Virus record (IMG/VR): IMGVR_UViG_3300036770_007547
Location: 62,001 to 126,000 of that record
DNA length: 64,000 nt
Strand: one strand, 5' to 3'
Shown here: positions 42,980 to 48,343 of the stretch, one piece after another
Layout of the letters: every line of letters starts with the position of its first letter
Numbering within the stretch: the first letter of the stretch is position 1
Notes under the pieces: model-generated
The model's input: the letters and a program-made list of their open reading frames with translations, nothing else
The model's database searches: none
Told to the model about the DNA's origin: nothing
Program-made: the position numbers and the translations under genes

Positions 42980-43620
42980 TGCAACTTCTCCTGTATGAAT
43001 TTTGCAAAAGCCCAATGGGCTTCGAGTTCGTAATGTTGTTCTATGCGTTTGAATCCGTGAGTGTCACAGAAATCCACCCAGCTGGGCAAAACCAGATTGT
43101 TTTGTTTCAGGCATCGATGCAAAGAGGTATCCCCGGGCACCTGATAGCTGAAACCAAATCTCCAGTCAATGTTTTTGCTGTCAAGATACTGTTGCAAAGC
43201 CAGCATTTGCACCACGCTGTGTTCGCGAAACCATTCGTCATCAAACTGATCACGGAATATGCTTTGTGCCAACACATGCATCAAAGCACCGTTGTTGTTG
43301 AGACGAGGATGCAGCTCTATGGCATTACCGCTGTTCAACGAAAAATAACGAGATTTTAGATCGCGTTCCTGCCAGAATGGTATGGCCAATTCCAAACGAT
43401 CGAAGTGGCTCCATTGAATGTACACAAAATCGTAGTGATGTTCCTCGAGATGTTGCACAGTGCGGCGGCGTATGCTGTCGTTGCTGCTGCCGGCCTGGGC
43501 TATGTTCACGACCTGCCAATCCGCAACATAGTTGGGCCAAGTCAATGTCGGACTCACTTCGGCATCTTCGTGTAATTCGCAACCTTGCACATGGCTGCAT
43601 CCGTTGACCAACACTTTCAT
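42976..43620 (-). CDS. SGNH/GDSL hydrolase-like hypothetical protein
   Basis: NGCSH block I, NIAQAGSSND block II, IQWS, C-terminal HY...AH. Confidence 0.55.
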   Translation of the reverse strand: MKVLVNGCSHVQGCELHEDAEVSPTLTWPNYVADWQVVNIAQAGSSNDSIRRRTVQHLEEHHYDFVYIQWSHFDRLELAIPFWQERDLKSRYFSLNSGNAIELHPRLNNNGALMHVLAQSIFRDQFDDEWFREHSVVQMLALQQYLDSKNIDWRFGFSYQVPGDTSLHRCLKQNNLVLPSWVDFCDTHGFKRIEQHYELEAHWAFAKFIQEKLQ

Positions 43621-44150
43621 GTGAGTTCACGTATGTTGAGATGTTCGAGGGTATCATGCAACATCACAATCTGTCGCCGACAGTCTTCGAGGGCATTGTG
43701 AGTGGCCGGTGGTTTTGGCACTCCCGGCCATAGGCTGTAAACTGTTCGAGCATCGCGCACACGGTAATATTTCCAAGGCAGGGCCATGCCAGCTTCTTTG
43801 TAAGCATGCTCGAGTATGTTGGCATCAAAAGTGGGACCATTGGCCCAGAACCTATTGCTGTGCCAGATCATCCGGCCCAGTTCTTCCAGACTTTGTTTCA
43901 ACGAAATACGATCGTGGTCTCCAAACGCTTCGTCTTGTATGTGTTTGGGTTGTTGGCTCCACCAGGCCAAGGTGTCGTCCTGTACTCGCCGAGAAGGCTG
44001 GCTTTCGGGATCAATCCTGGCATAGTAGCTGATCCAGTTTTCCCAATCGCAATGCCGATTGAGGGGATCAAATGTCTGCGCTGCGATTGTGATTATGCAG
44101 GCCTCGGGTCCTGTGCCCAAGGTTTCGATGTCGATCATGATATCAGCCAT
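43617..44150 (-). CDS. DEDDh 3'-5' exonuclease (RNase AS-like)
   Basis: IMIDIETLG, WANGPTFD, PWKYY.VRDART, HNALED. Confidence 0.88.
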   Translation of the reverse strand: MADIMIDIETLGTGPEACIITIAAQTFDPLNRHCDWENWISYYARIDPESQPSRRVQDDTLAWWSQQPKHIQDEAFGDHDRISLKQSLEELGRMIWHSNRFWANGPTFDANILEHAYKEAGMALPWKYYRVRDARTVYSLWPGVPKPPATHNALEDCRRQIVMLHDTLEHLNIRELT

Positions 44151-44156
44151 GCTGGG

Positions 44157-44185
44157 ATTATAGCATGACTTGGGAAGCCAGTCTA
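44157..44185 (-). promoter_or_regulatory. Sigma70-type early promoter, leaderless transcript
   Basis: TAGACT-17 nt-TATAAT with TG extension; ATG 6 nt after the -10 box. Confidence 0.75.
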
Positions 44186-44464
44186 GCGATAAAGGTTGAG
44201 TAGTTTGAGCAGTTTGGCCTTGGGATTTATCCGCTTGGTACGCTTGGCCTTGCGTGCCTGTCGAACCTTGGTGCGCTGGCGTGTTTTTTTCATGCGTTGT
44301 GCTTGGGCAACATCTGGCGCCGACGAACAGTCGGACACCTTGGGCACTGTACGGTTGCGCCTAGGACCAGATTCACAGCGCCAACGCAGGGTCACTTTGC
44401 CGGTCTTGGGATTCCGCCGCCACACCATGCGATGCTCGTCCAAGATGAATTCGCTGGCTCTCAC
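44183..44464 (-). CDS. Small very basic probable internal head protein
   Basis: MRASEFILDE N-terminus (GTG start), R/K-rich, RC.SGPR..R.V. Confidence 0.65.
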   Translation of the reverse strand: MRASEFILDEHRMVWRRNPKTGKVTLRWRCESGPRRNRTVPKVSDCSSAPDVAQAQRMKKTRQRTKVRQARKAKRTKRINPKAKLLKLLNLYR

Positions 44465-44467
44465 AAA

Positions 44468-45229
44468 CTATCCTATCACAAAAGTCAGTGGTTGGCTGCC
44501 ATCCACATAGAGTTTGAGATCTTCTATGCACCGGTCCATCATGGCCTGGCCTTCGCTCTTCATGGCAGCACCATTGAGCGCTGTACCACCCTGTGGGCCT
44601 GCGATGCTGGCAAATTTTTCGCGAGCTTCGCCGATGATGTATTTGGCTGCACCCACCATGTAATCACGAAACCACTGCGAGATCTGATAGTCGCTCAACA
44701 GCGTGATTTCGGGCTTGAGATTGTAGGTCCACAACAACACCACTTCGTCGTTGCCGCGCGGATCGCGTATGAGTTGCAGCTTCTTGGTCACCGGATTCCA
44801 GGTATAGTTGATGTAACCTCCAAACATCCTGGCAGCCAGTTCCACATATTGCTGATAAAAGTCATATGTGGCCATTCCGCCCGATGCTTGGTTGAAATTG
44901 AGTAGATACACGTTGAGTGTGGCTGCGCCAAATGGGTCGAAACTGTAGCCACCTACACCAGTGATACCAATGGTTCTACGGAAAATCTGGCGCACTTGAG
45001 TGACTTCTTGTGGCAATGTGTACACGTTCACGTCATCCTGCAACTGCAAGAAACTGTAGCTCTCTTCGTAGGCGTTTTGAGCTCGTTGGCGATATGTGCC
45101 TAGGGTTTTCTGATAGGCTGCTTCGAGGTGTGCTGGGTCTAGCTCGATGTCGATGATGCCATCACCCAGTTCGAGTCTCACATACTCGAGCAGTTGGCTT
45201 TTGAGGGGTTCTAGTGTTTGATCTGCCAT
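44468..45229 (-). CDS. gp13: Neck protein (T4 gp13-like)
   Basis: LGDGIIDIELD, YTLPQEV..V, GEAREKF.SIAGPQGGTALNG, P..FVIG. Confidence 0.88.
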   Translation of the reverse strand: MADQTLEPLKSQLLEYVRLELGDGIIDIELDPAHLEAAYQKTLGTYRQRAQNAYEESYSFLQLQDDVNVYTLPQEVTQVRQIFRRTIGITGVGGYSFDPFGAATLNVYLLNFNQASGGMATYDFYQQYVELAARMFGGYINYTWNPVTKKLQLIRDPRGNDEVVLLWTYNLKPEITLLSDYQISQWFRDYMVGAAKYIIGEAREKFASIAGPQGGTALNGAAMKSEGQAMMDRCIEDLKLYVDGSQPLTFVIG

Positions 45230-45230
45230 A

Positions 45231-45264
45231 GTGGGCTCCGTGTGGTATTTAGCACGGAGCCCAC
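45231..45264 (-). promoter_or_regulatory. RBS-sequestering hairpin with a late promoter in the loop
   Basis: Perfect 12-bp stem gtgggctccgtg/cacggagcccac; loop reads CTAAATACCA on the minus strand; the mRNA 3' arm contains the GGAG SD and ends 1 nt before the gp13 ATG. Confidence 0.8.
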
Positions 45265-45269
45265 ACGGA

Positions 45270-45491
45270 TTAACCCTGGCTTACAAACTTGTTGAGTTTT
45301 TCAGCTTCGGCCAGCACACTGTCAGTGCTGGGAAAATCCGGCAAGGCAGGAAATGGTGCCTGTTTGTCGGTTTCAAACCGGCAGTGATATTCCTGTATCA
45401 AGGCCTCTCGGCGTTGGAATACTGGCGTTGTGAGTACTTCGTTGGCCAGCTTGAGGAGTTCGAGACGGATCTCGTAGGGTGTTTTGCTCAT
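45270..45491 (-). CDS. Small phage protein of the 'PYEIRLELL' type
   Basis: MSKTPYEIRLELLKLA...AEKLNKFVS; AAGGAG SD preceded by a CA-rich leader. Confidence 0.75.
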   Translation of the reverse strand: MSKTPYEIRLELLKLANEVLTTPVFQRREALIQEYHCRFETDKQAPFPALPDFPSTDSVLAEAEKLNKFVSQG

Positions 45492-45544
45492 GGTAGTCTC
45501 CTTTCTGTGAGTGTGTGTATGTGCTACACGAGCATGTTTAGTTA

Positions 45545-46693
45545 TCATTTGACTCGCAGGATCACTAAATTTTCGTTGCCACGACCATTCCATTTGATCT
45601 CGGTGGCTTTGATGTCCTTGAAGAACTTGCGAGCATTGGGCACCGATGCTGCCATGAGAGTCTTGAGCTGTTCAGCGGGTTTCCTCAGTGTTTTTTGCAG
45701 TGTTTGTGCGGTATCAAGTCCAATGAGGCCCGAACCTTTTACTGTGAAACTGCCCACATGAGAATCTGCCACAGCATGTATCAGCTTGCGTTTTTTGACA
45801 TCATACAACCAGGCTTCGCTGGCACCCACCAAGCGAGCGGCTGTCTCACTGCGCAATTTGAGCTCGGCATCTTCCACCAAGATTTTGAACCCGCGTGCTA
45901 TGACCTCGGGAGGTTTGGCCTTCTTGGCTCTGGGTTTGCGTTCCACTTTCTTGAGTTGTCGATAACTGTTGCAATCGGCGATCACTTGTTCCACGAACTT
46001 GATCATGCCGCGTATCTGCAATTTTCCAAAATTTCCGTAGCCCTCGACCAGTTGCGCATCTCGACCTTCGGCCACGGCTTCGAGTTCTTCCAGCCGTTGT
46101 TGCCAAAGTCCAGCGATGTCTCCCACCATCTGCGGTGACACATTCATGCCGCGCAATACTGTGATGGGTTTGAAGTCGGCCGACATCTTGCAGCCAGCCC
46201 GTAACATGTCATCAAACATGCCTTCTAGCTCGCCTGCGGCCTCCATCATCTTTTCACGCAAACGATCCTGGATAGTGATCTTGGGTACGATGGGTTCGTC
46301 CACGGCTTTGGTGACTTCTTTTACGGATAACGCGGCCTGGCACTGTTGAGAAACATGATCGTTGACATAGAGCAGTTCGCGATCCGAGAGGGCAAGGCCC
46401 ATGAGACTCATGCGACTCAGCCAAGCAGCCTGCAAGCTCACCGAACTGTCAGGTACACGATGATAGTTGCGGGCATCTTTCTGGCGATCGTTGCGTGTGA
46501 GCCAATCAATCAAAAAATTCTTGGCATCCTTTTTACCATAGTGGTAGTTGTACCAAGTGAACGCTCCGATGACCTGGCTCATGCGCTGTTCGGCTTCGGG
46601 TTGTGCTCGCCACTGTGGTTCCCCGCCAGTGTATTTGGTTTCGTGCGATTTGGGCTGTAAAGGTTTCACGGGTTTGAGTGCAGTCGCAGTCAT
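45545..46693 (-). CDS. Hypothetical early protein
   Basis: 382-aa ORF; WYNYHY, QLVEGY, KTLRKP, NGR.NEN motifs as seen in large T4-like phage proteins. Confidence 0.75.
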   Translation of the reverse strand: MTATALKPVKPLQPKSHETKYTGGEPQWRAQPEAEQRMSQVIGAFTWYNYHYGKKDAKNFLIDWLTRNDRQKDARNYHRVPDSSVSLQAAWLSRMSLMGLALSDRELLYVNDHVSQQCQAALSVKEVTKAVDEPIVPKITIQDRLREKMMEAAGELEGMFDDMLRAGCKMSADFKPITVLRGMNVSPQMVGDIAGLWQQRLEELEAVAEGRDAQLVEGYGNFGKLQIRGMIKFVEQVIADCNSYRQLKKVERKPRAKKAKPPEVIARGFKILVEDAELKLRSETAARLVGASEAWLYDVKKRKLIHAVADSHVGSFTVKGSGLIGLDTAQTLQKTLRKPAEQLKTLMAASVPNARKFFKDIKATEIKWNGRGNENLVILRVK

Positions 46694-46962
46694 CTTGGCT
46701 CCTTGTTCATTAGTTTAGCCATCAATATGTGTCCTTCGAAATTCTTCAGGGCTTCGTCGGCTTGGGCGAGAAGATCGTTGAAGCGCGGGCTTCCGGTGCC
46801 TCGCCGTCGGCAATTGACCCATTCGGCATTGGCCTGGTTCAGCATTTTTGAGATCGCTCGATGCCAGATCCAGAATTCTCTGACACCTATTCTCATGCCA
46901 ACACAGTTGCGATGAGCTTGGTCCAAACGATCATGCAATTTTTGCCAATCTTCCAGGTCCAT
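46690..46962 (-). CDS. Hypothetical early protein
   Basis: 90-aa ORF directly behind a sigma70 promoter; ATGA overlap with the next gene. Confidence 0.7.
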   Translation of the reverse strand: MDLEDWQKLHDRLDQAHRNCVGMRIGVREFWIWHRAISKMLNQANAEWVNCRRRGTGSPRFNDLLAQADEALKNFEGHILMAKLMNKEPR

Positions 46963-46967
46963 GTGCT

Positions 46968-46996
46968 ATTTTAGCATGATCATCGTTTCCGGTCAA
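46968..46996 (-). promoter_or_regulatory. Sigma70-type early promoter, leaderless transcript
   Basis: TTGACC-17 nt-TAAAAT with TG extension; ATG 5 nt after the -10 box. Confidence 0.8.
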
Positions 46997-47004
46997 GCCG
47001 TCCA

Positions 47005-47010
47005 TAAATA
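47005..47010 (+). promoter_or_regulatory. Late promoter core TAAATA, 7 nt before the gp14 ATG
   Basis: CATAAATA-CAGAACT-ATG; no SD. Confidence 0.75.
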
Positions 47011-47017
47011 CAGAACT

Positions 47018-48343
47018 ATGCCCAGACTCAGTCTTTATCGTCCCAATCGCACCAATGATTACCGATTTTTGGATAGAACTATTTCGGAAATGTACACAGT
47101 GGGCGGAGTGGACATCTACGTCCACAAATACATGGGACCAAAAACCGGCGGCGAAGATTCTGCCGAAAGCGGCAACTACGATGCCACGCAGCCGATTTAC
47201 AGCAACGAAAACCCCTTGTTCATACAGGATCTCTTGTTGCTGGAAAATCGAGACCGAGCCTACGATCCCGATGTCTATCGCTTGCGCGGGGTTTACAATA
47301 CCCAAGACATAGATTTCAACCTCAGCCAGTTTGGCCTGTTCTTGCAGAATGATACCTTGTTTATCACGTTCCACTACAATGACATGATCGACACCATCGG
47401 CCGCAAGCTCATGAGCGGTGATGTGTTAGAAGTGCCCAACCTGCGCGACATGCATCCGCTTGACACCACTATCGCAAAAGCCATACCCAGATACTACGTG
47501 ATACAAGAAGCCAATTATGGCAGTGAAGGATTCAGCCAGACTTGGTTGCCGCACCTGTGGCGTGTGAAAGCCACACCCATGGTCAATGCACAAGAATACC
47601 AGGATGTGCTCAACAAACCGTTCGTGCAGGATCAAATCTGGGATCCGGGCAATTTTTATCCTGCAGGTTCCATAGTCAACTACGGCGATGTTTACTATCA
47701 AGCTCGAGTGGACGTGCCCGTTGACACCGAAATCACTGACACCAACTATTGGCGAGAGATTGATCCTCCCACGCAAGAAGAAAAAGTCACTACCAGACCC
47801 AAAGATCTTGAAATCAACGATGCCATCTTGGCACAAGCCGAGATCGAAGTCCCGCTTTCGGGCTACGACACAGTAAAGTTTTACATCTATCCCACGTTGG
47901 AAGATGGTACTCCGGCACCGCCCCAGGCCCTGTCTGTGGATGATTCACAGGTCACTATTGACAGCAGTGGCACCAACGTCACCCAAGCATCTGCCACGCC
48001 ACAGAGCGATGGCTATACCATGGGCTATCTCACTGGAGATGGCATCGCTCCCAACGGCTTGCCGGTGACGCCGGGAGTGAGCTTCCCTTCCAACCCTTAC
48101 GAAGGCGACTATTGTTTGCGGCTGGACTATTTCCCCAACCGACTGTTCCGATTCAACGGCAAAGGATGGATCAAGATCGAGGACAATGTACGCACTGACC
48201 TCACCAACGGTCCGGCCAATCAGACCCTGCGCTCGAGCTTTGTCAACAACGACAACACGGTGCCGACCACGGATCGCGGCGACATACCCAGCCGTCAGAG
48301 TCTCAGCGAGATTCTCAAACCACGAGCCGACAACGGAGGCTAA
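47018..48343 (+). CDS. gp14: Neck / head-closure protein (T4 gp14-like) with insertions
   Basis: GGVDIYVHKY, IQDLLLLENRDR.Y, LSQFGLFL..D.LFITFH, GDVLEVP; upstream of the gp15-like gene. Start MPRLSLYRP. Confidence 0.75.
   Translation: MPRLSLYRPNRTNDYRFLDRTISEMYTVGGVDIYVHKYMGPKTGGEDSAESGNYDATQPIYSNENPLFIQDLLLLENRDRAYDPDVYRLRGVYNTQDIDFNLSQFGLFLQNDTLFITFHYNDMIDTIGRKLMSGDVLEVPNLRDMHPLDTTIAKAIPRYYVIQEANYGSEGFSQTWLPHLWRVKATPMVNAQEYQDVLNKPFVQDQIWDPGNFYPAGSIVNYGDVYYQARVDVPVDTEITDTNYWREIDPPTQEEKVTTRPKDLEINDAILAQAEIEVPLSGYDTVKFYIYPTLEDGTPAPPQALSVDDSQVTIDSSGTNVTQASATPQSDGYTMGYLTGDGIAPNGLPVTPGVSFPSNPYEGDYCLRLDYFPNRLFRFNGKGWIKIEDNVRTDLTNGPANQTLRSSFVNNDNTVPTTDRGDIPSRQSLSEILKPRADNGG

What the first reader, a model, noticed from the sequence alone, without database searches (positions are those of the whole stretch)
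45227..45264. Hairpin switch: gp13 RBS is hidden in early read-through RNA and freed by a late promoter in the loop
Seen: minus-strand GUGGGCUCCGUG-CUAAAUACCA-CACGGAGCCCAC-U-AUG, a perfect 12-bp stem whose 3' arm holds the GGAG SD. Upstream genes are driven by the sigma70 promoter at 46968-46996, so early RNA would fold and block translation. A transcript from the TAAATA in the loop lacks the 5' arm. Established for T4 genes e, soc, 49 and I-TevI; here it appears to be applied to a neck protein gene embedded between early genes.
Basis: partly seen in the sequence, partly recalled or inferred. Interest (0 to 1): 0.65.

Follow-up and report, generated by a model that had tools for sequence, protein, structure and literature searches.

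The report
Hairpin switch masking neck-gene ribosome site
An uncultured jumbo phage hides the ribosome-binding site of its neck-protein gene in an RNA hairpin with a late promoter inside it, so probably only late transcripts are translated; this is a trick known from phage T4, conserved here across a different phage group.

Summary
On the minus strand, 45264-45231 forms a perfect 12-bp stem. The 3' arm holds the GGAG Shine-Dalgarno, the AUG follows one base later, and the 10-nt loop holds TAAATA.

The sequence-level predictions of the interpretation hold:
- The record is a 223-kb IMG/VR phage contig (about 64% complete), related to RaK2/PA5oct-type jumbo phages, not to T4.
- It encodes a gp55-family late sigma factor.
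- TAAATA is the most enriched hexamer upstream of its genes.
- The upstream genes follow a sigma70-type promoter, and no U-tract terminator intervenes.
- This gene has the most occluded ribosome site of 236 genes.

All 80 environmental relatives keep TAAATA. Most keep a covarying hairpin over the ribosome site, in one of two architectures. Cultured Klebsiella, E. coli, Salmonella and Xanthomonas jumbo phages have the same promoter-in-hairpin module.

Most likely mechanism: read-through RNA is translationally silent, and late RNA starting 5-7 nt after TAAATA is open. No RNA or translation data exist, so start sites and repression are inferred.

Verdict: a new member of a known kind (T4 genes e, soc, 49, I-TevI). 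Moderate interest.

The parts
45253..45264 (-). 5' arm of the hairpin (GUGGGCUCCGUG). It lies upstream of the late-promoter motif, so it is present only in RNA started further upstream.
45243..45252 (-). Loop CUAAAUACCA. It holds the TAAATA late-promoter core at 45251-45246.
   Evidence: Sequence. Motif enrichment and spacing. Flank preferences (C at +2). Conserved in 80 of 80 relatives.
45231..45242 (-). 3' arm CACGGAGCCCAC, with the Shine-Dalgarno GGAG at 45239-45236. The inferred late transcription start is at about 45241-45239.
   Evidence: Sequence. Start-site inference from the bimodal motif-to-ATG spacing and from T4 late-promoter geometry (PMC2988020).
44468..45229 (-). Neck protein gene (head-tail adaptor Ad2, gp13-like), 253 aa, AUG at 45229-45227.
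   Evidence: PHROG 211 at E = 1.5e-27. 38-42% identity to annotated neck proteins of RaK2/PA5oct-type phages.
45270..45491 (-). Small ORF of 73 aa, function unknown. Its stop codon lies 5 nt before the 5' arm. It is present only in relatives with the long 'promoter-in-loop' hairpin.
45545..46693 (-). 382-aa gene of unknown function (PHROG 11903). It is a syntenic homolog of PA5oct gp192, which carries no virion mass-spectrometry (MS) note in the PA5oct record.
46690..46962 (-). 90-aa ORF, the first gene behind the sigma70-like promoter. Its ATG lies 5 nt after the -10 hexamer.
46968..46996 (-). Sigma70-type promoter TTGACC-N17-TAAAAT with an extended -10 TG. This is the presumed early promoter that feeds read-through RNA.
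   Evidence: Relatives carry TTGAC(A/C)-N17-TGnTATAAT in the corresponding upstream region.
44157..44185 (-). Second sigma70-like promoter (TAGACT-N17-TATAAT, with TG), in front of the exonuclease gene 43617-44150. It marks the next presumed early unit downstream of the neck gene.
47005..47020 (+). Divergent TAAATA, followed 7 nt later by the ATG (47018) of a virion structural protein gene. This is a leaderless-type late promoter that helps calibrate the start site.

Best explanation
This is a transcript-dependent translational switch of the T4 gene e / soc / 49 / I-TevI kind.

Host-type (sigma70) transcription starts at 46996-46968 and runs through three genes of unknown function into the neck gene. 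In that long RNA, the 12-bp hairpin buries the GGAG and abuts the AUG, so 30S subunits cannot bind.

Later, RNA polymerase carrying the phage's gp55-family sigma recognises the TAAATA in the loop. It starts about 5-7 nt downstream, at roughly 45241-45239. That RNA lacks the whole 5' arm, begins just before the GGAG, and is freely translated.

Shown here: the structure, the motif, its genome-wide promoter-like behaviour, the sigma factor gene, the upstream promoter motif, the exceptional occlusion of this ribosome site, and conservation with covariation.

Inferred: the start sites, the read-through, the timing, and the translational block.
For: Structure and occlusion
- Structure and chance.
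- Opening the ribosome site (-14 to +6) costs 23.9 kcal/mol in the long RNA. That is rank 1 of 236 genes in the record (mean 7.2, sd 3.5). It costs 3.8 kcal/mol in RNA started at the 6th nt after TAAATA.

TAAATA as a late promoter
- TAAATA is the most enriched hexamer upstream of genes: 43 of 77 copies, 2.8 expected.
- The distance from motif end to ATG is bimodal. Thirteen genes lie at 4-8 nt, none at 9-15, and 28 at 16-34. This fits a start 5-7 nt after the motif, as in T4 (PMC2988020).
- The neck gene's 16 nt is the shortest Shine-Dalgarno-led spacing.
- A late sigma factor gene is present: PHROG 12791 at E = 2.5e-77 and PHROG 234 (the T4 gp55 family) at E = 4.4e-23.
- An ATAAATA late motif and a gp55-like sigma are published for the related phages CBB and GAP32 (PMC5259590).

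Upstream transcription
- Upstream sigma70-like promoter. Near-consensus versions lie in the corresponding region of most relatives examined.
- No U-tract terminator lies in between.

Conservation
- All 80 IMG/VR relatives keep TAAATA 16-21 nt before the ATG in nearly all (spacings).
- 48 of 56 distinct upstream sequences have an opening cost of at least 11 kcal/mol. The mean is 15.3 for long RNA against 4.2 for short RNA.
- There are 43 distinct hairpin variants, in two architectures. The 5' arm always lies upstream of the inferred start or ends 6-8 nt after the motif.
- Own versus swapped arms: -12.7 against -8.3 kcal/mol, with 0 of 2000 permutations reaching the observed mean.
- Covariation score 0.242 against 0.117 for shuffles (0 of 500), and 22 cells with double changes against 6.5.
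- Cultured relatives at about 40% protein identity have the same module with other arm sequences: K64-1, Muenster, Ecwhy_1, EJP2, Munch, fENko-Kae01, XaC1 and XbC2. Their opening costs are 16.5-23.7 kcal/mol.

Precedent
- The mechanism was established experimentally in T4 (PMC3014915).
Against: - There are no RNA data. No RNA run was listed for this sequence, so start sites, read-through and timing are unverified.
- 'Early' for the upstream genes rests on promoter type alone. Their functions are unknown.
- Homologs of T4 gp33 and gp45 were not found, in an incomplete record. The late machinery may therefore differ from T4, and the start-site geometry with it.
- Comparing sense and antisense folds gave no strand signal. 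An RNA-level role is therefore favoured by context, not proven.
- Other late genes downstream of presumed early genes, such as the tail sheath gene, have no such hairpin. The reason the neck gene is singled out is unknown.
- In the common architecture of relatives, the upstream stop codon abuts the 5' arm. That arrangement would also suit translational coupling.
- Several cultured relatives have a U-run after the 3' arm. Termination may be part of the function there.
Confidence: 0.6

Rival explanations
1. Translational coupling device. The hairpin keeps the neck ribosome site closed unless a ribosome finishing the upstream ORF melts the 5' arm. Neck protein made from polycistronic RNA would then be tied to translation of the upstream gene, rather than blocked.
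For: In most relatives, the stop codon of the 382-aa gene lies inside TAAATA and the 5' arm starts 0-3 nt later. A terminating ribosome would cover that arm; this rests on established knowledge of the ribosome footprint, not on a test here.
Against: - In the window, the stop (45272-45270) is 5 nt before a 12-bp, roughly -24 kcal/mol stem. Most of that stem would survive a terminating ribosome.
- In cultured relatives the upstream gene ends about 30-60 nt before the neck start codon, so only a few nt to about 20 nt before the 5' arm, and the hairpin persists.
- Coupling does not explain why TAAATA is always placed so that its transcript lacks the 5' arm.
Confidence: 0.13
2. Transcription terminator or insulator only. 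The stem stops or pauses upstream transcription, or stabilises the 3' end of the upstream mRNA. Masking of the Shine-Dalgarno would be incidental.
For: - The hairpin sits directly after the upstream ORF.
- In several cultured relatives, a run of 4-8 U lies between the 3' arm and the AUG.
Against: - In the window and its 80 close relatives, no U-run follows the stem.
- The record's evident terminators do have U-runs.
- The terminator scan does not call it.
- The 3' arm is always the Shine-Dalgarno or start codon, whatever its sequence.
Confidence: 0.1
3. Constitutive attenuator. The hairpin forms in all neck transcripts and simply keeps output of a low-copy virion protein low. On this view the TAAATA is not the start of the productive mRNA, or transcription starts closer to the motif than inferred.
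For: - Neck proteins are needed in few copies per virion (general knowledge of T4 gp13, not tested here).
- In the common architecture, a start 1-3 nt after TAAATA would keep the hairpin in the late RNA.
Against: - In the window, the motif is in the loop. Any transcript it drives must lack the 5' arm.
- The class of 13 genes with an ATG 4-8 nt after TAAATA argues for a start 5-7 nt downstream.
- TAAATA is conserved in 80 of 80 relatives, and also in PA5oct and Atu_ph07.
Confidence: 0.07
4. DNA-level element. The inverted repeat would be a protein-binding palindrome, or a cruciform that modulates the late promoter.
For: - The comparison of sense and antisense folds is neutral.
- Two further late promoters in the record lie inside inverted repeats.
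Against: - The arms change sequence freely while keeping complementarity. That is not how a sequence-specific protein site behaves.
- One arm is always the ribosome site of the neck gene.
Confidence: 0.04

Closest known systems
T4 gene e (lysozyme) leader hairpin with late promoters in its 5' strand (reviewed in PMC3014915)
   Same: - The Shine-Dalgarno and AUG are sequestered in a helix in long, early transcripts.
- A T4-type late promoter is placed so that late RNA lacks the 5' strand.
- A gp55-type sigma factor is present.
   Different: - The gene is different (neck protein, not lysozyme).
- The phage lineage is different (RaK2/PA5oct-type jumbo phages).
- The core motif is TAAATA rather than TATAAATA.
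- No experimental data exist.
- The module is conserved in two interchangeable architectures.
T4 soc, gene 49 and I-TevI; Aeh1 mobE; I-TevII/III (RBS-sequestering hairpins; PMC3014915)
   Same: The logic is the same: delayed translation of a late-expressed gene that lies inside an earlier transcription unit.
   Different: - Those cases are mostly accessory or mobile genes. Here it is a core virion gene.
- For I-TevI, the stated purpose is to protect intron folding, which does not apply here.
ATAAATA late-promoter motif with a gp55-like sigma in phages CBB and GAP32 (PMC5259590)
   Same: - Same motif class upstream of structural genes.
- A gp55-like sigma is present.
- gp33 and gp45 homologs were not detected.
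   Different: In the passages read here (a term search of the text), that paper reports the motif and no hairpin or ribosome-site masking at the neck gene. The whole paper was not read.
Rho-independent terminator
   Same: A GC-rich perfect stem directly after an ORF.
   Different: - There is no U-tract in the window or its clade.
- The loop is 10 nt.
- The 3' arm is the next gene's Shine-Dalgarno.
Translational-coupling hairpins in polycistronic mRNAs (for example in RNA phages; general knowledge)
   Same: The downstream ribosome site is closed by pairing with upstream sequence.
   Different: Here an internal promoter bypasses the closure. In the window, the stem is too long and too far from the stop codon to be opened by a terminating ribosome.

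Membership tests
T4-type RBS-masking hairpin bypassed by an internal late promoter (genes e, soc, 49, I-TevI) | The Shine-Dalgarno and/or AUG lie in a stable helix. | tested here: met
   A 12-bp perfect stem holds GGAG. The opening cost is 23.9 kcal/mol, rank 1 of 236 genes.
T4-type RBS-masking hairpin bypassed by an internal late promoter (genes e, soc, 49, I-TevI) | A late-promoter motif is placed so that its transcript lacks the 5' strand of the helix. | tested here: met
   TAAATA lies in the loop. The motif behaves as a promoter genome-wide and is conserved in 80 of 80 relatives.
T4-type RBS-masking hairpin bypassed by an internal late promoter (genes e, soc, 49, I-TevI) | A mapped late 5' end lies inside or after the 5' strand. 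| not testable with these tools
   No RNA run was listed. The start site is inferred from spacing statistics and from T4 geometry.
T4-type RBS-masking hairpin bypassed by an internal late promoter (genes e, soc, 49, I-TevI) | Earlier transcription from upstream reads into the gene. | tested here: inconclusive
   A sigma70-like promoter is present, with near-consensus versions in the corresponding region of most relatives examined. No U-tract terminator lies in between. Actual read-through and timing were not observed.
T4-type RBS-masking hairpin bypassed by an internal late promoter (genes e, soc, 49, I-TevI) | The long RNA is poorly translated and the short RNA is well translated. | not testable with these tools
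   Only computed accessibility is available: 23.9 against 3.8 kcal/mol.
T4-type late transcription system | A gp55-family late sigma factor. | tested here: met
   The ORF at G000 155305-156183 matches PHROG 12791 at E = 2.5e-77 and PHROG 234 at E = 4.4e-23.
T4-type late transcription system | gp33 co-activator and gp45 sliding-clamp activator. | tested here: inconclusive
   Single-sequence searches found no match in a record estimated at 64% complete. They are also reported absent in the related phage CBB.
Rho-independent terminator | A U-tract immediately after a GC-rich stem. | tested here: not met
   UAUGGCAG follows the stem. The scan does not call it. Evident terminators in the record have U-runs.
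Curated RNA families (Rfam 15) | A match at or near the gathering score. | tested here: not met
   There is only a chance-level hit: 13.6 bits against a gathering score of 297.

The most novel reading that the evidence does not exclude
The promoter-in-hairpin at the neck gene is an ancient, lineage-wide module of RaK2/Asteriusvirus-type jumbo phages, from uncultured freshwater-type relatives to cultured E. coli, Klebsiella, Salmonella and Xanthomonas phages.

On this reading, compensatory evolution has maintained it because neck protein made before the late phase is harmful, for example by capping portals before DNA packaging. In some members the same hairpin also terminates early transcription, which would make it a combined terminator, ribosome-site mask and late promoter.
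Probability: 0.35. Interest if true: 0.6.

Novelty: new member of a known kind. Interest (0 to 1): 0.45.

Why it matters
- It extends a classic T4 post-transcriptional device to a core virion gene in a separate and very large group of jumbo phages.
- Its persistence through complete turnover of the arm sequences shows that selection maintains it.
- It gives a concrete, cheap experiment for cultured relatives: 5'-end mapping, and long-versus-short leader reporters in E. coli or Klebsiella phages.
- It supplies a calibrated late-promoter model for this clade: a TAAATA core with a start 5-7 nt downstream, and many apparently leaderless late genes.
- That model improves start-codon annotation. At least two deposited neck-gene starts look misplaced.

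Tried and rejected
- RNA evidence: the look-up of sequencing runs listed no run.
- Strand test: sense and antisense folds were compared, and G-U pairs counted, to show an RNA-level structure on the mRNA strand. The result was inconclusive: antisense was marginally more stable, with 41 against 46 G-U pairs.
- MAFFT alignment A1 was not in structural register, because loops of 4 and 5 nt shift the pairs. Covariation was therefore counted on a model-fitted alignment, which leans towards the structure. It was also tested by an arm-swapping test that needs no alignment.
- Function of the 382-aa, 73-aa and 90-aa upstream ORFs: PHROGs, Pfam, NCBIfam, PDB sequences and the ESM Atlas gave only 'unknown function'.
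- A megablast search of the phage collection found nothing near.
- A possible link was examined between hairpin strength and the kind of gene inserted upstream. The hairpin is weak in several loci where another gene behind a TAAATA is inserted, but it is retained in others. This was not decisive.
- Chance was rejected.
- A known RNA family was rejected.
- PA5oct temporal expression tables are not held as text.
- The big protein searches, structure prediction and complex prediction were not needed and were not run.

Full report
**What is there**

On the minus strand, the sequence at 45264-45227 reads as follows:
- 5' arm GUGGGCUCCGUG, 45264-45253.
- Loop CUAAAUACCA, 45252-45243.
- 3' arm CACGGAGCCCAC, 45242-45231.
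- U at 45230, then AUG at 45229-45227.

The repeat finder gives 12 nt, 100% complementary, with 10 nt between the arms. The 91-nt context folds at -33.4 kcal/mol, against -20.0 +/- 3.2 for shuffles. That is z = -4.15, with none of 200 shuffles as stable.

In the whole 222,775-bp record there are two perfect stems of 12 bp or more. The other is an obvious bidirectional terminator with A/U runs. Simulated genomes give 0.2 such stems.

**Which genome**

The window is bases 62001-126000 of a single-contig IMG/VR virus record of 222,775 bp. It is about 51% G+C, and CheckV estimates it at 64% complete.

The ORF behind the hairpin (44468-45229, 253 aa) matches the head-tail adaptor Ad2 / gp13-like family, PHROG 211, at E = 1.5e-27. 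It is 38-42% identical to the neck proteins of Atu_ph07, RaK2, K64-1, PA5oct, XaC1 and the E. coli Asteriusvirus group. This is therefore a jumbo myophage of the RaK2/PA5oct kind, not a T4-like phage in the strict sense. 'gp13' is a distant-homology label.

**Is TAAATA a late promoter here?**

- TAAATA is the single most enriched hexamer in the 70 nt upstream of ORFs. Of 77 oriented copies, 43 lie there, against 2.8 expected.
- It precedes the tail sheath gene, the tail tube gene, several very large structural genes, and the late sigma gene itself.
- There is no -35 element. Flanks prefer A at -1 and C at +2, and the loop copy has the C at +2.
- The record encodes a gp55-family sigma factor: PHROG 12791 at E = 2.5e-77, the T4 gp55 family PHROG 234 at E = 4.4e-23, and a direct match to T4 gp55 at E = 4e-6.
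- An ATAAATA motif before structural genes and a gp55-like sigma have been published for the related phages CBB and GAP32. The same paper notes that gp33 and gp45 homologs are missing (PMC5259590).
- I also found no gp33 or gp45 match, but the record is incomplete.

**Where would the late RNA start?**

In T4, the 8-bp box spans -13 to -6 (PMC2988020). Position +1 is therefore the 6th nt after the box.

The record gives independent support. The distance from the end of TAAATA to the first ATG that opens a long ORF is bimodal. Thirteen genes lie at 4-8 nt, none at 9-15, and 28 at 16-34. Control hexamers show no such pattern.

The short class fits leaderless mRNAs that start at or next to the AUG. 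The long class fits the minimum room needed for a Shine-Dalgarno plus spacer behind a start 5-7 nt after the motif.

In relatives, one structural gene switches between the two forms with the same MPRLS N-terminus. The neck gene's 16 nt is the shortest of the long class.

The late RNA would therefore begin at about 45241-45239, immediately before GGAG, and would contain none of the 5' arm.

**Is there upstream, non-late transcription?**

- A sigma70-type promoter, TTGACC-N17-TAAAAT with an extended -10 TG, lies at 46996-46968.
- It heads three co-directional ORFs: 90 aa, 382 aa (PHROG 11903) and 73 aa. These run to 5 nt before the hairpin.
- No TAAATA lies on that strand between the promoter and the hairpin.
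- The scan finds no U-tract terminator there.
- In most of the relatives examined, the corresponding upstream region holds a near-perfect TTGAC(A/C)-N17-TGnTATAAT. It stands back to back with a divergent TAAATA for a structural gene.
- The 382-aa gene is the syntenic homolog of PA5oct gp192 (31% identity, E = 1e-37). In the PA5oct record, gp192 carries no virion mass-spectrometry note, unlike the three genes after it.
- Downstream of the neck gene come a small basic ORF and a second sigma70-like promoter (44185-44157). Then follow a 3'-5' exonuclease, an unknown ORF and a dNMP kinase.

The neck gene is thus a lone TAAATA-driven gene in a non-structural neighbourhood. 'Early' is inferred from promoter type only.

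**How exceptional is the masking?**

I computed the free-energy cost of making positions -14 to +6 around each start codon single-stranded, within an RNA spanning -80 to +25.
- The neck gene costs 23.9 kcal/mol. This is the highest of 236 ORFs in the record (mean 7.2, sd 3.5) and the highest of 32 TAAATA-driven genes (mean 8.0).
- In RNA starting at the 6th nt after TAAATA, the cost is 3.8 kcal/mol.

**Comparative evidence from close relatives**

A scan of IMG/VR returned 80 loci whose neck proteins are 80-87% identical.
- Every one has TAAATA before the ATG, 16-21 nt away in nearly all of them (spacings).
- Of 56 distinct upstream sequences, 48 have an opening cost of at least 11 kcal/mol. 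The mean is 15.3 in long RNA against 4.2 in short RNA.

Two architectures occur.
- Type A, as in the window: the 5' arm lies upstream of TAAATA, the motif is in the loop, and the 3' arm is the Shine-Dalgarno or, in two loci, the ATG itself. Examples are L013, L021, L036, L039, L046, L049, L050, L051 and L054. The arms differ in sequence, for instance GGGAUUCCUC/GAGGAAUCCC and GAAUCCUUGC/GCAAGGAUUC.
- Type B, the majority: the stem begins in the last bases of TAAATA and ends 6-8 nt after it, the Shine-Dalgarno is in the loop or 3' arm, and the stem often reaches the AU of the AUG.

In both types, the inferred start falls after the 5' arm or in its last bases.

There are 43 distinct hairpin variants.
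- Swapping 5' and 3' halves between the 25 type-B variants weakens the fold from -12.7 to -8.3 kcal/mol. None of 2000 permutations reached the observed mean.
- On a model-fitted alignment, the covariation score is 0.242 against 0.117 for shuffles (0 of 500). There are 22 cells with changes on both sides against 6.5, and 4 of 9 pairs show double changes. Slid controls give 0.05-0.14.
- These alignments lean towards the structure and the sequences are related, so the numbers are supportive rather than probabilities.

**Comparative evidence from distant, cultured relatives**

At about 40% protein identity, the same promoter-in-hairpin module reappears with other arm sequences:
- ..GCACCUC / GAGGUGC.. 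in Klebsiella phages K64-1, Muenster and RaK2, and in E. coli phage Ecwhy_1.
- A wobble-containing version in E. coli phage EJP2.
- GCACCCCUA / UAGGGGUGC in Salmonella phage Munch and Klebsiella phage fENko-Kae01.
- AAUCCUC / GAGGAUU in Xanthomonas phage XaC1.
- A related form in Xanthomonas phage XbC2.

Their opening costs are 16.5-23.7 kcal/mol. In these phages too the neighbours are non-structural. A peptidyl-tRNA-hydrolase-like gene lies upstream in Muenster and fENko-Kae01. A dNMP kinase (XaC1, fENko-Kae01), a kinase-like gene (Munch) or a homing endonuclease (RaK2, Muenster, K64-1) lies next or one small ORF downstream.

The hairpin is absent or weak in PA5oct (10.0), Atu_ph07 (6.2), a Vibrio phage (8.1) and Phosso (12.6). 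PA5oct and Atu_ph07 still keep TAAATA.

**Mechanism and rivals**

The best reading is the T4 gene e / soc / 49 / I-TevI mechanism (PMC3014915). Long RNA is translationally silent. Late RNA from the internal promoter is open. I put this at about 0.6.

The rivals are:
- Translational coupling, about 0.13. The upstream stop codon abuts the 5' arm in type B. In the window, however, a 12-bp stem starts 5 nt after the stop and would largely survive a terminating ribosome. In cultured relatives the upstream gene ends about 30-60 nt before the neck start codon, so up to about 20 nt before the 5' arm.
- Terminator or insulator only, about 0.1. There is no U-run in the window or its clade. A U-run of 4-8 is present in several cultured relatives, so a dual role is possible there.
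- Constitutive attenuator, about 0.07.
- DNA-level palindrome, about 0.04. It is disfavoured because the arms keep complementarity, not sequence.

The sense-versus-antisense fold test gave no strand signal. No RNA run was listed.

**Novelty**

The mechanism is textbook for T4. Searches of the held paper library found no report of it at the neck gene of RaK2-type phages, although that library is incomplete. I class it as a new member of a known kind. The added points of interest are its deep conservation, its two interchangeable architectures, and its testability in cultured phages.

**Limits**

- All functional statements are inferences from sequence.
- Gene calls used for the background statistics are simple longest-ORF calls.

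Noticed in passing
window 47005-47020 (+), 23024 (-), 35823 (-), 42033 (+); whole record G000: The distance from TAAATA to the start codon is bimodal. Thirteen genes have their ATG only 4-8 nt after the motif, none lie at 9-15 nt, and 28 lie at 16-34 nt. This suggests that many late mRNAs of this phage are leaderless. In relatives, one structural gene (N-terminus MPRLS) alternates between the leaderless form and a Shine-Dalgarno-led form.
   Followed up: partly
window 46962-46996 (-) and 44150-44185 (-): Both sigma70-like promoters have the ATG of the next ORF only 5-6 nt after the -10 hexamer. These ORFs are the 90-aa ORF and the exonuclease. The presumed early mRNAs may therefore also be leaderless.
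   Followed up: no
G000 48633 and 45422 (minus strand; outside the window, at window coordinates -13367 and -16578): Two further TAAATA motifs lie inside inverted repeats. A stem of about 10 bp has the motif in the loop, before an 85-aa ORF. A 9-bp stem has a 3' arm that overlaps the motif. A type-B-like small hairpin also precedes the 247-aa gene at G000 131961. The device may not be unique to the neck gene.
   Followed up: partly
window 45535-45540 (-); loci L013, L039, L046, L049: The 73-aa ORF looks like an insertion between the 382-aa gene and the neck gene. Relatives with it keep a first TAAATA at the end of the 382-aa gene. In the window that copy is TAAACA, and in L049 it is lost. The neck gene has thus acquired or kept a second promoter inside the long hairpin.
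   Followed up: partly
L087 (RaK2, NC_019526) 308; L094 (Kaldavass, PQ464595) 235: The deposited start codons of the neck genes of RaK2 and Kaldavass lie inside the hairpin loop, with no Shine-Dalgarno. The same or similar sequence in K64-1, Muenster and XbC2 is annotated to start at the ATG after the GAGGUG or GGGG arm. The two starts look misannotated.
   Followed up: partly
L006 about 1729 and L044 about 1753 (minus strand of the loci): In some relatives, the structural gene divergent from the sigma70 promoter seems to begin with ATT. The sequence reads ..AAAATTCCACG.., encoding IPRLS where others have MPRLS. A Shine-Dalgarno precedes it, so this is a possible non-canonical start codon.
   Followed up: no
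window 44183-44425 (-): Directly after the neck gene lies a small, very basic ORF of about 80 aa, rich in Arg and Lys. It has no family match, and its function is unknown.
   Followed up: no
L088, L093, L095, L096, L098 (cultured relatives): In several cultured relatives, the hairpin is followed by a run of 4-8 U before the AUG. An inner small hairpin also stacks on the outer stem. The same element could therefore double as an intrinsic terminator for upstream transcription.
   Followed up: no
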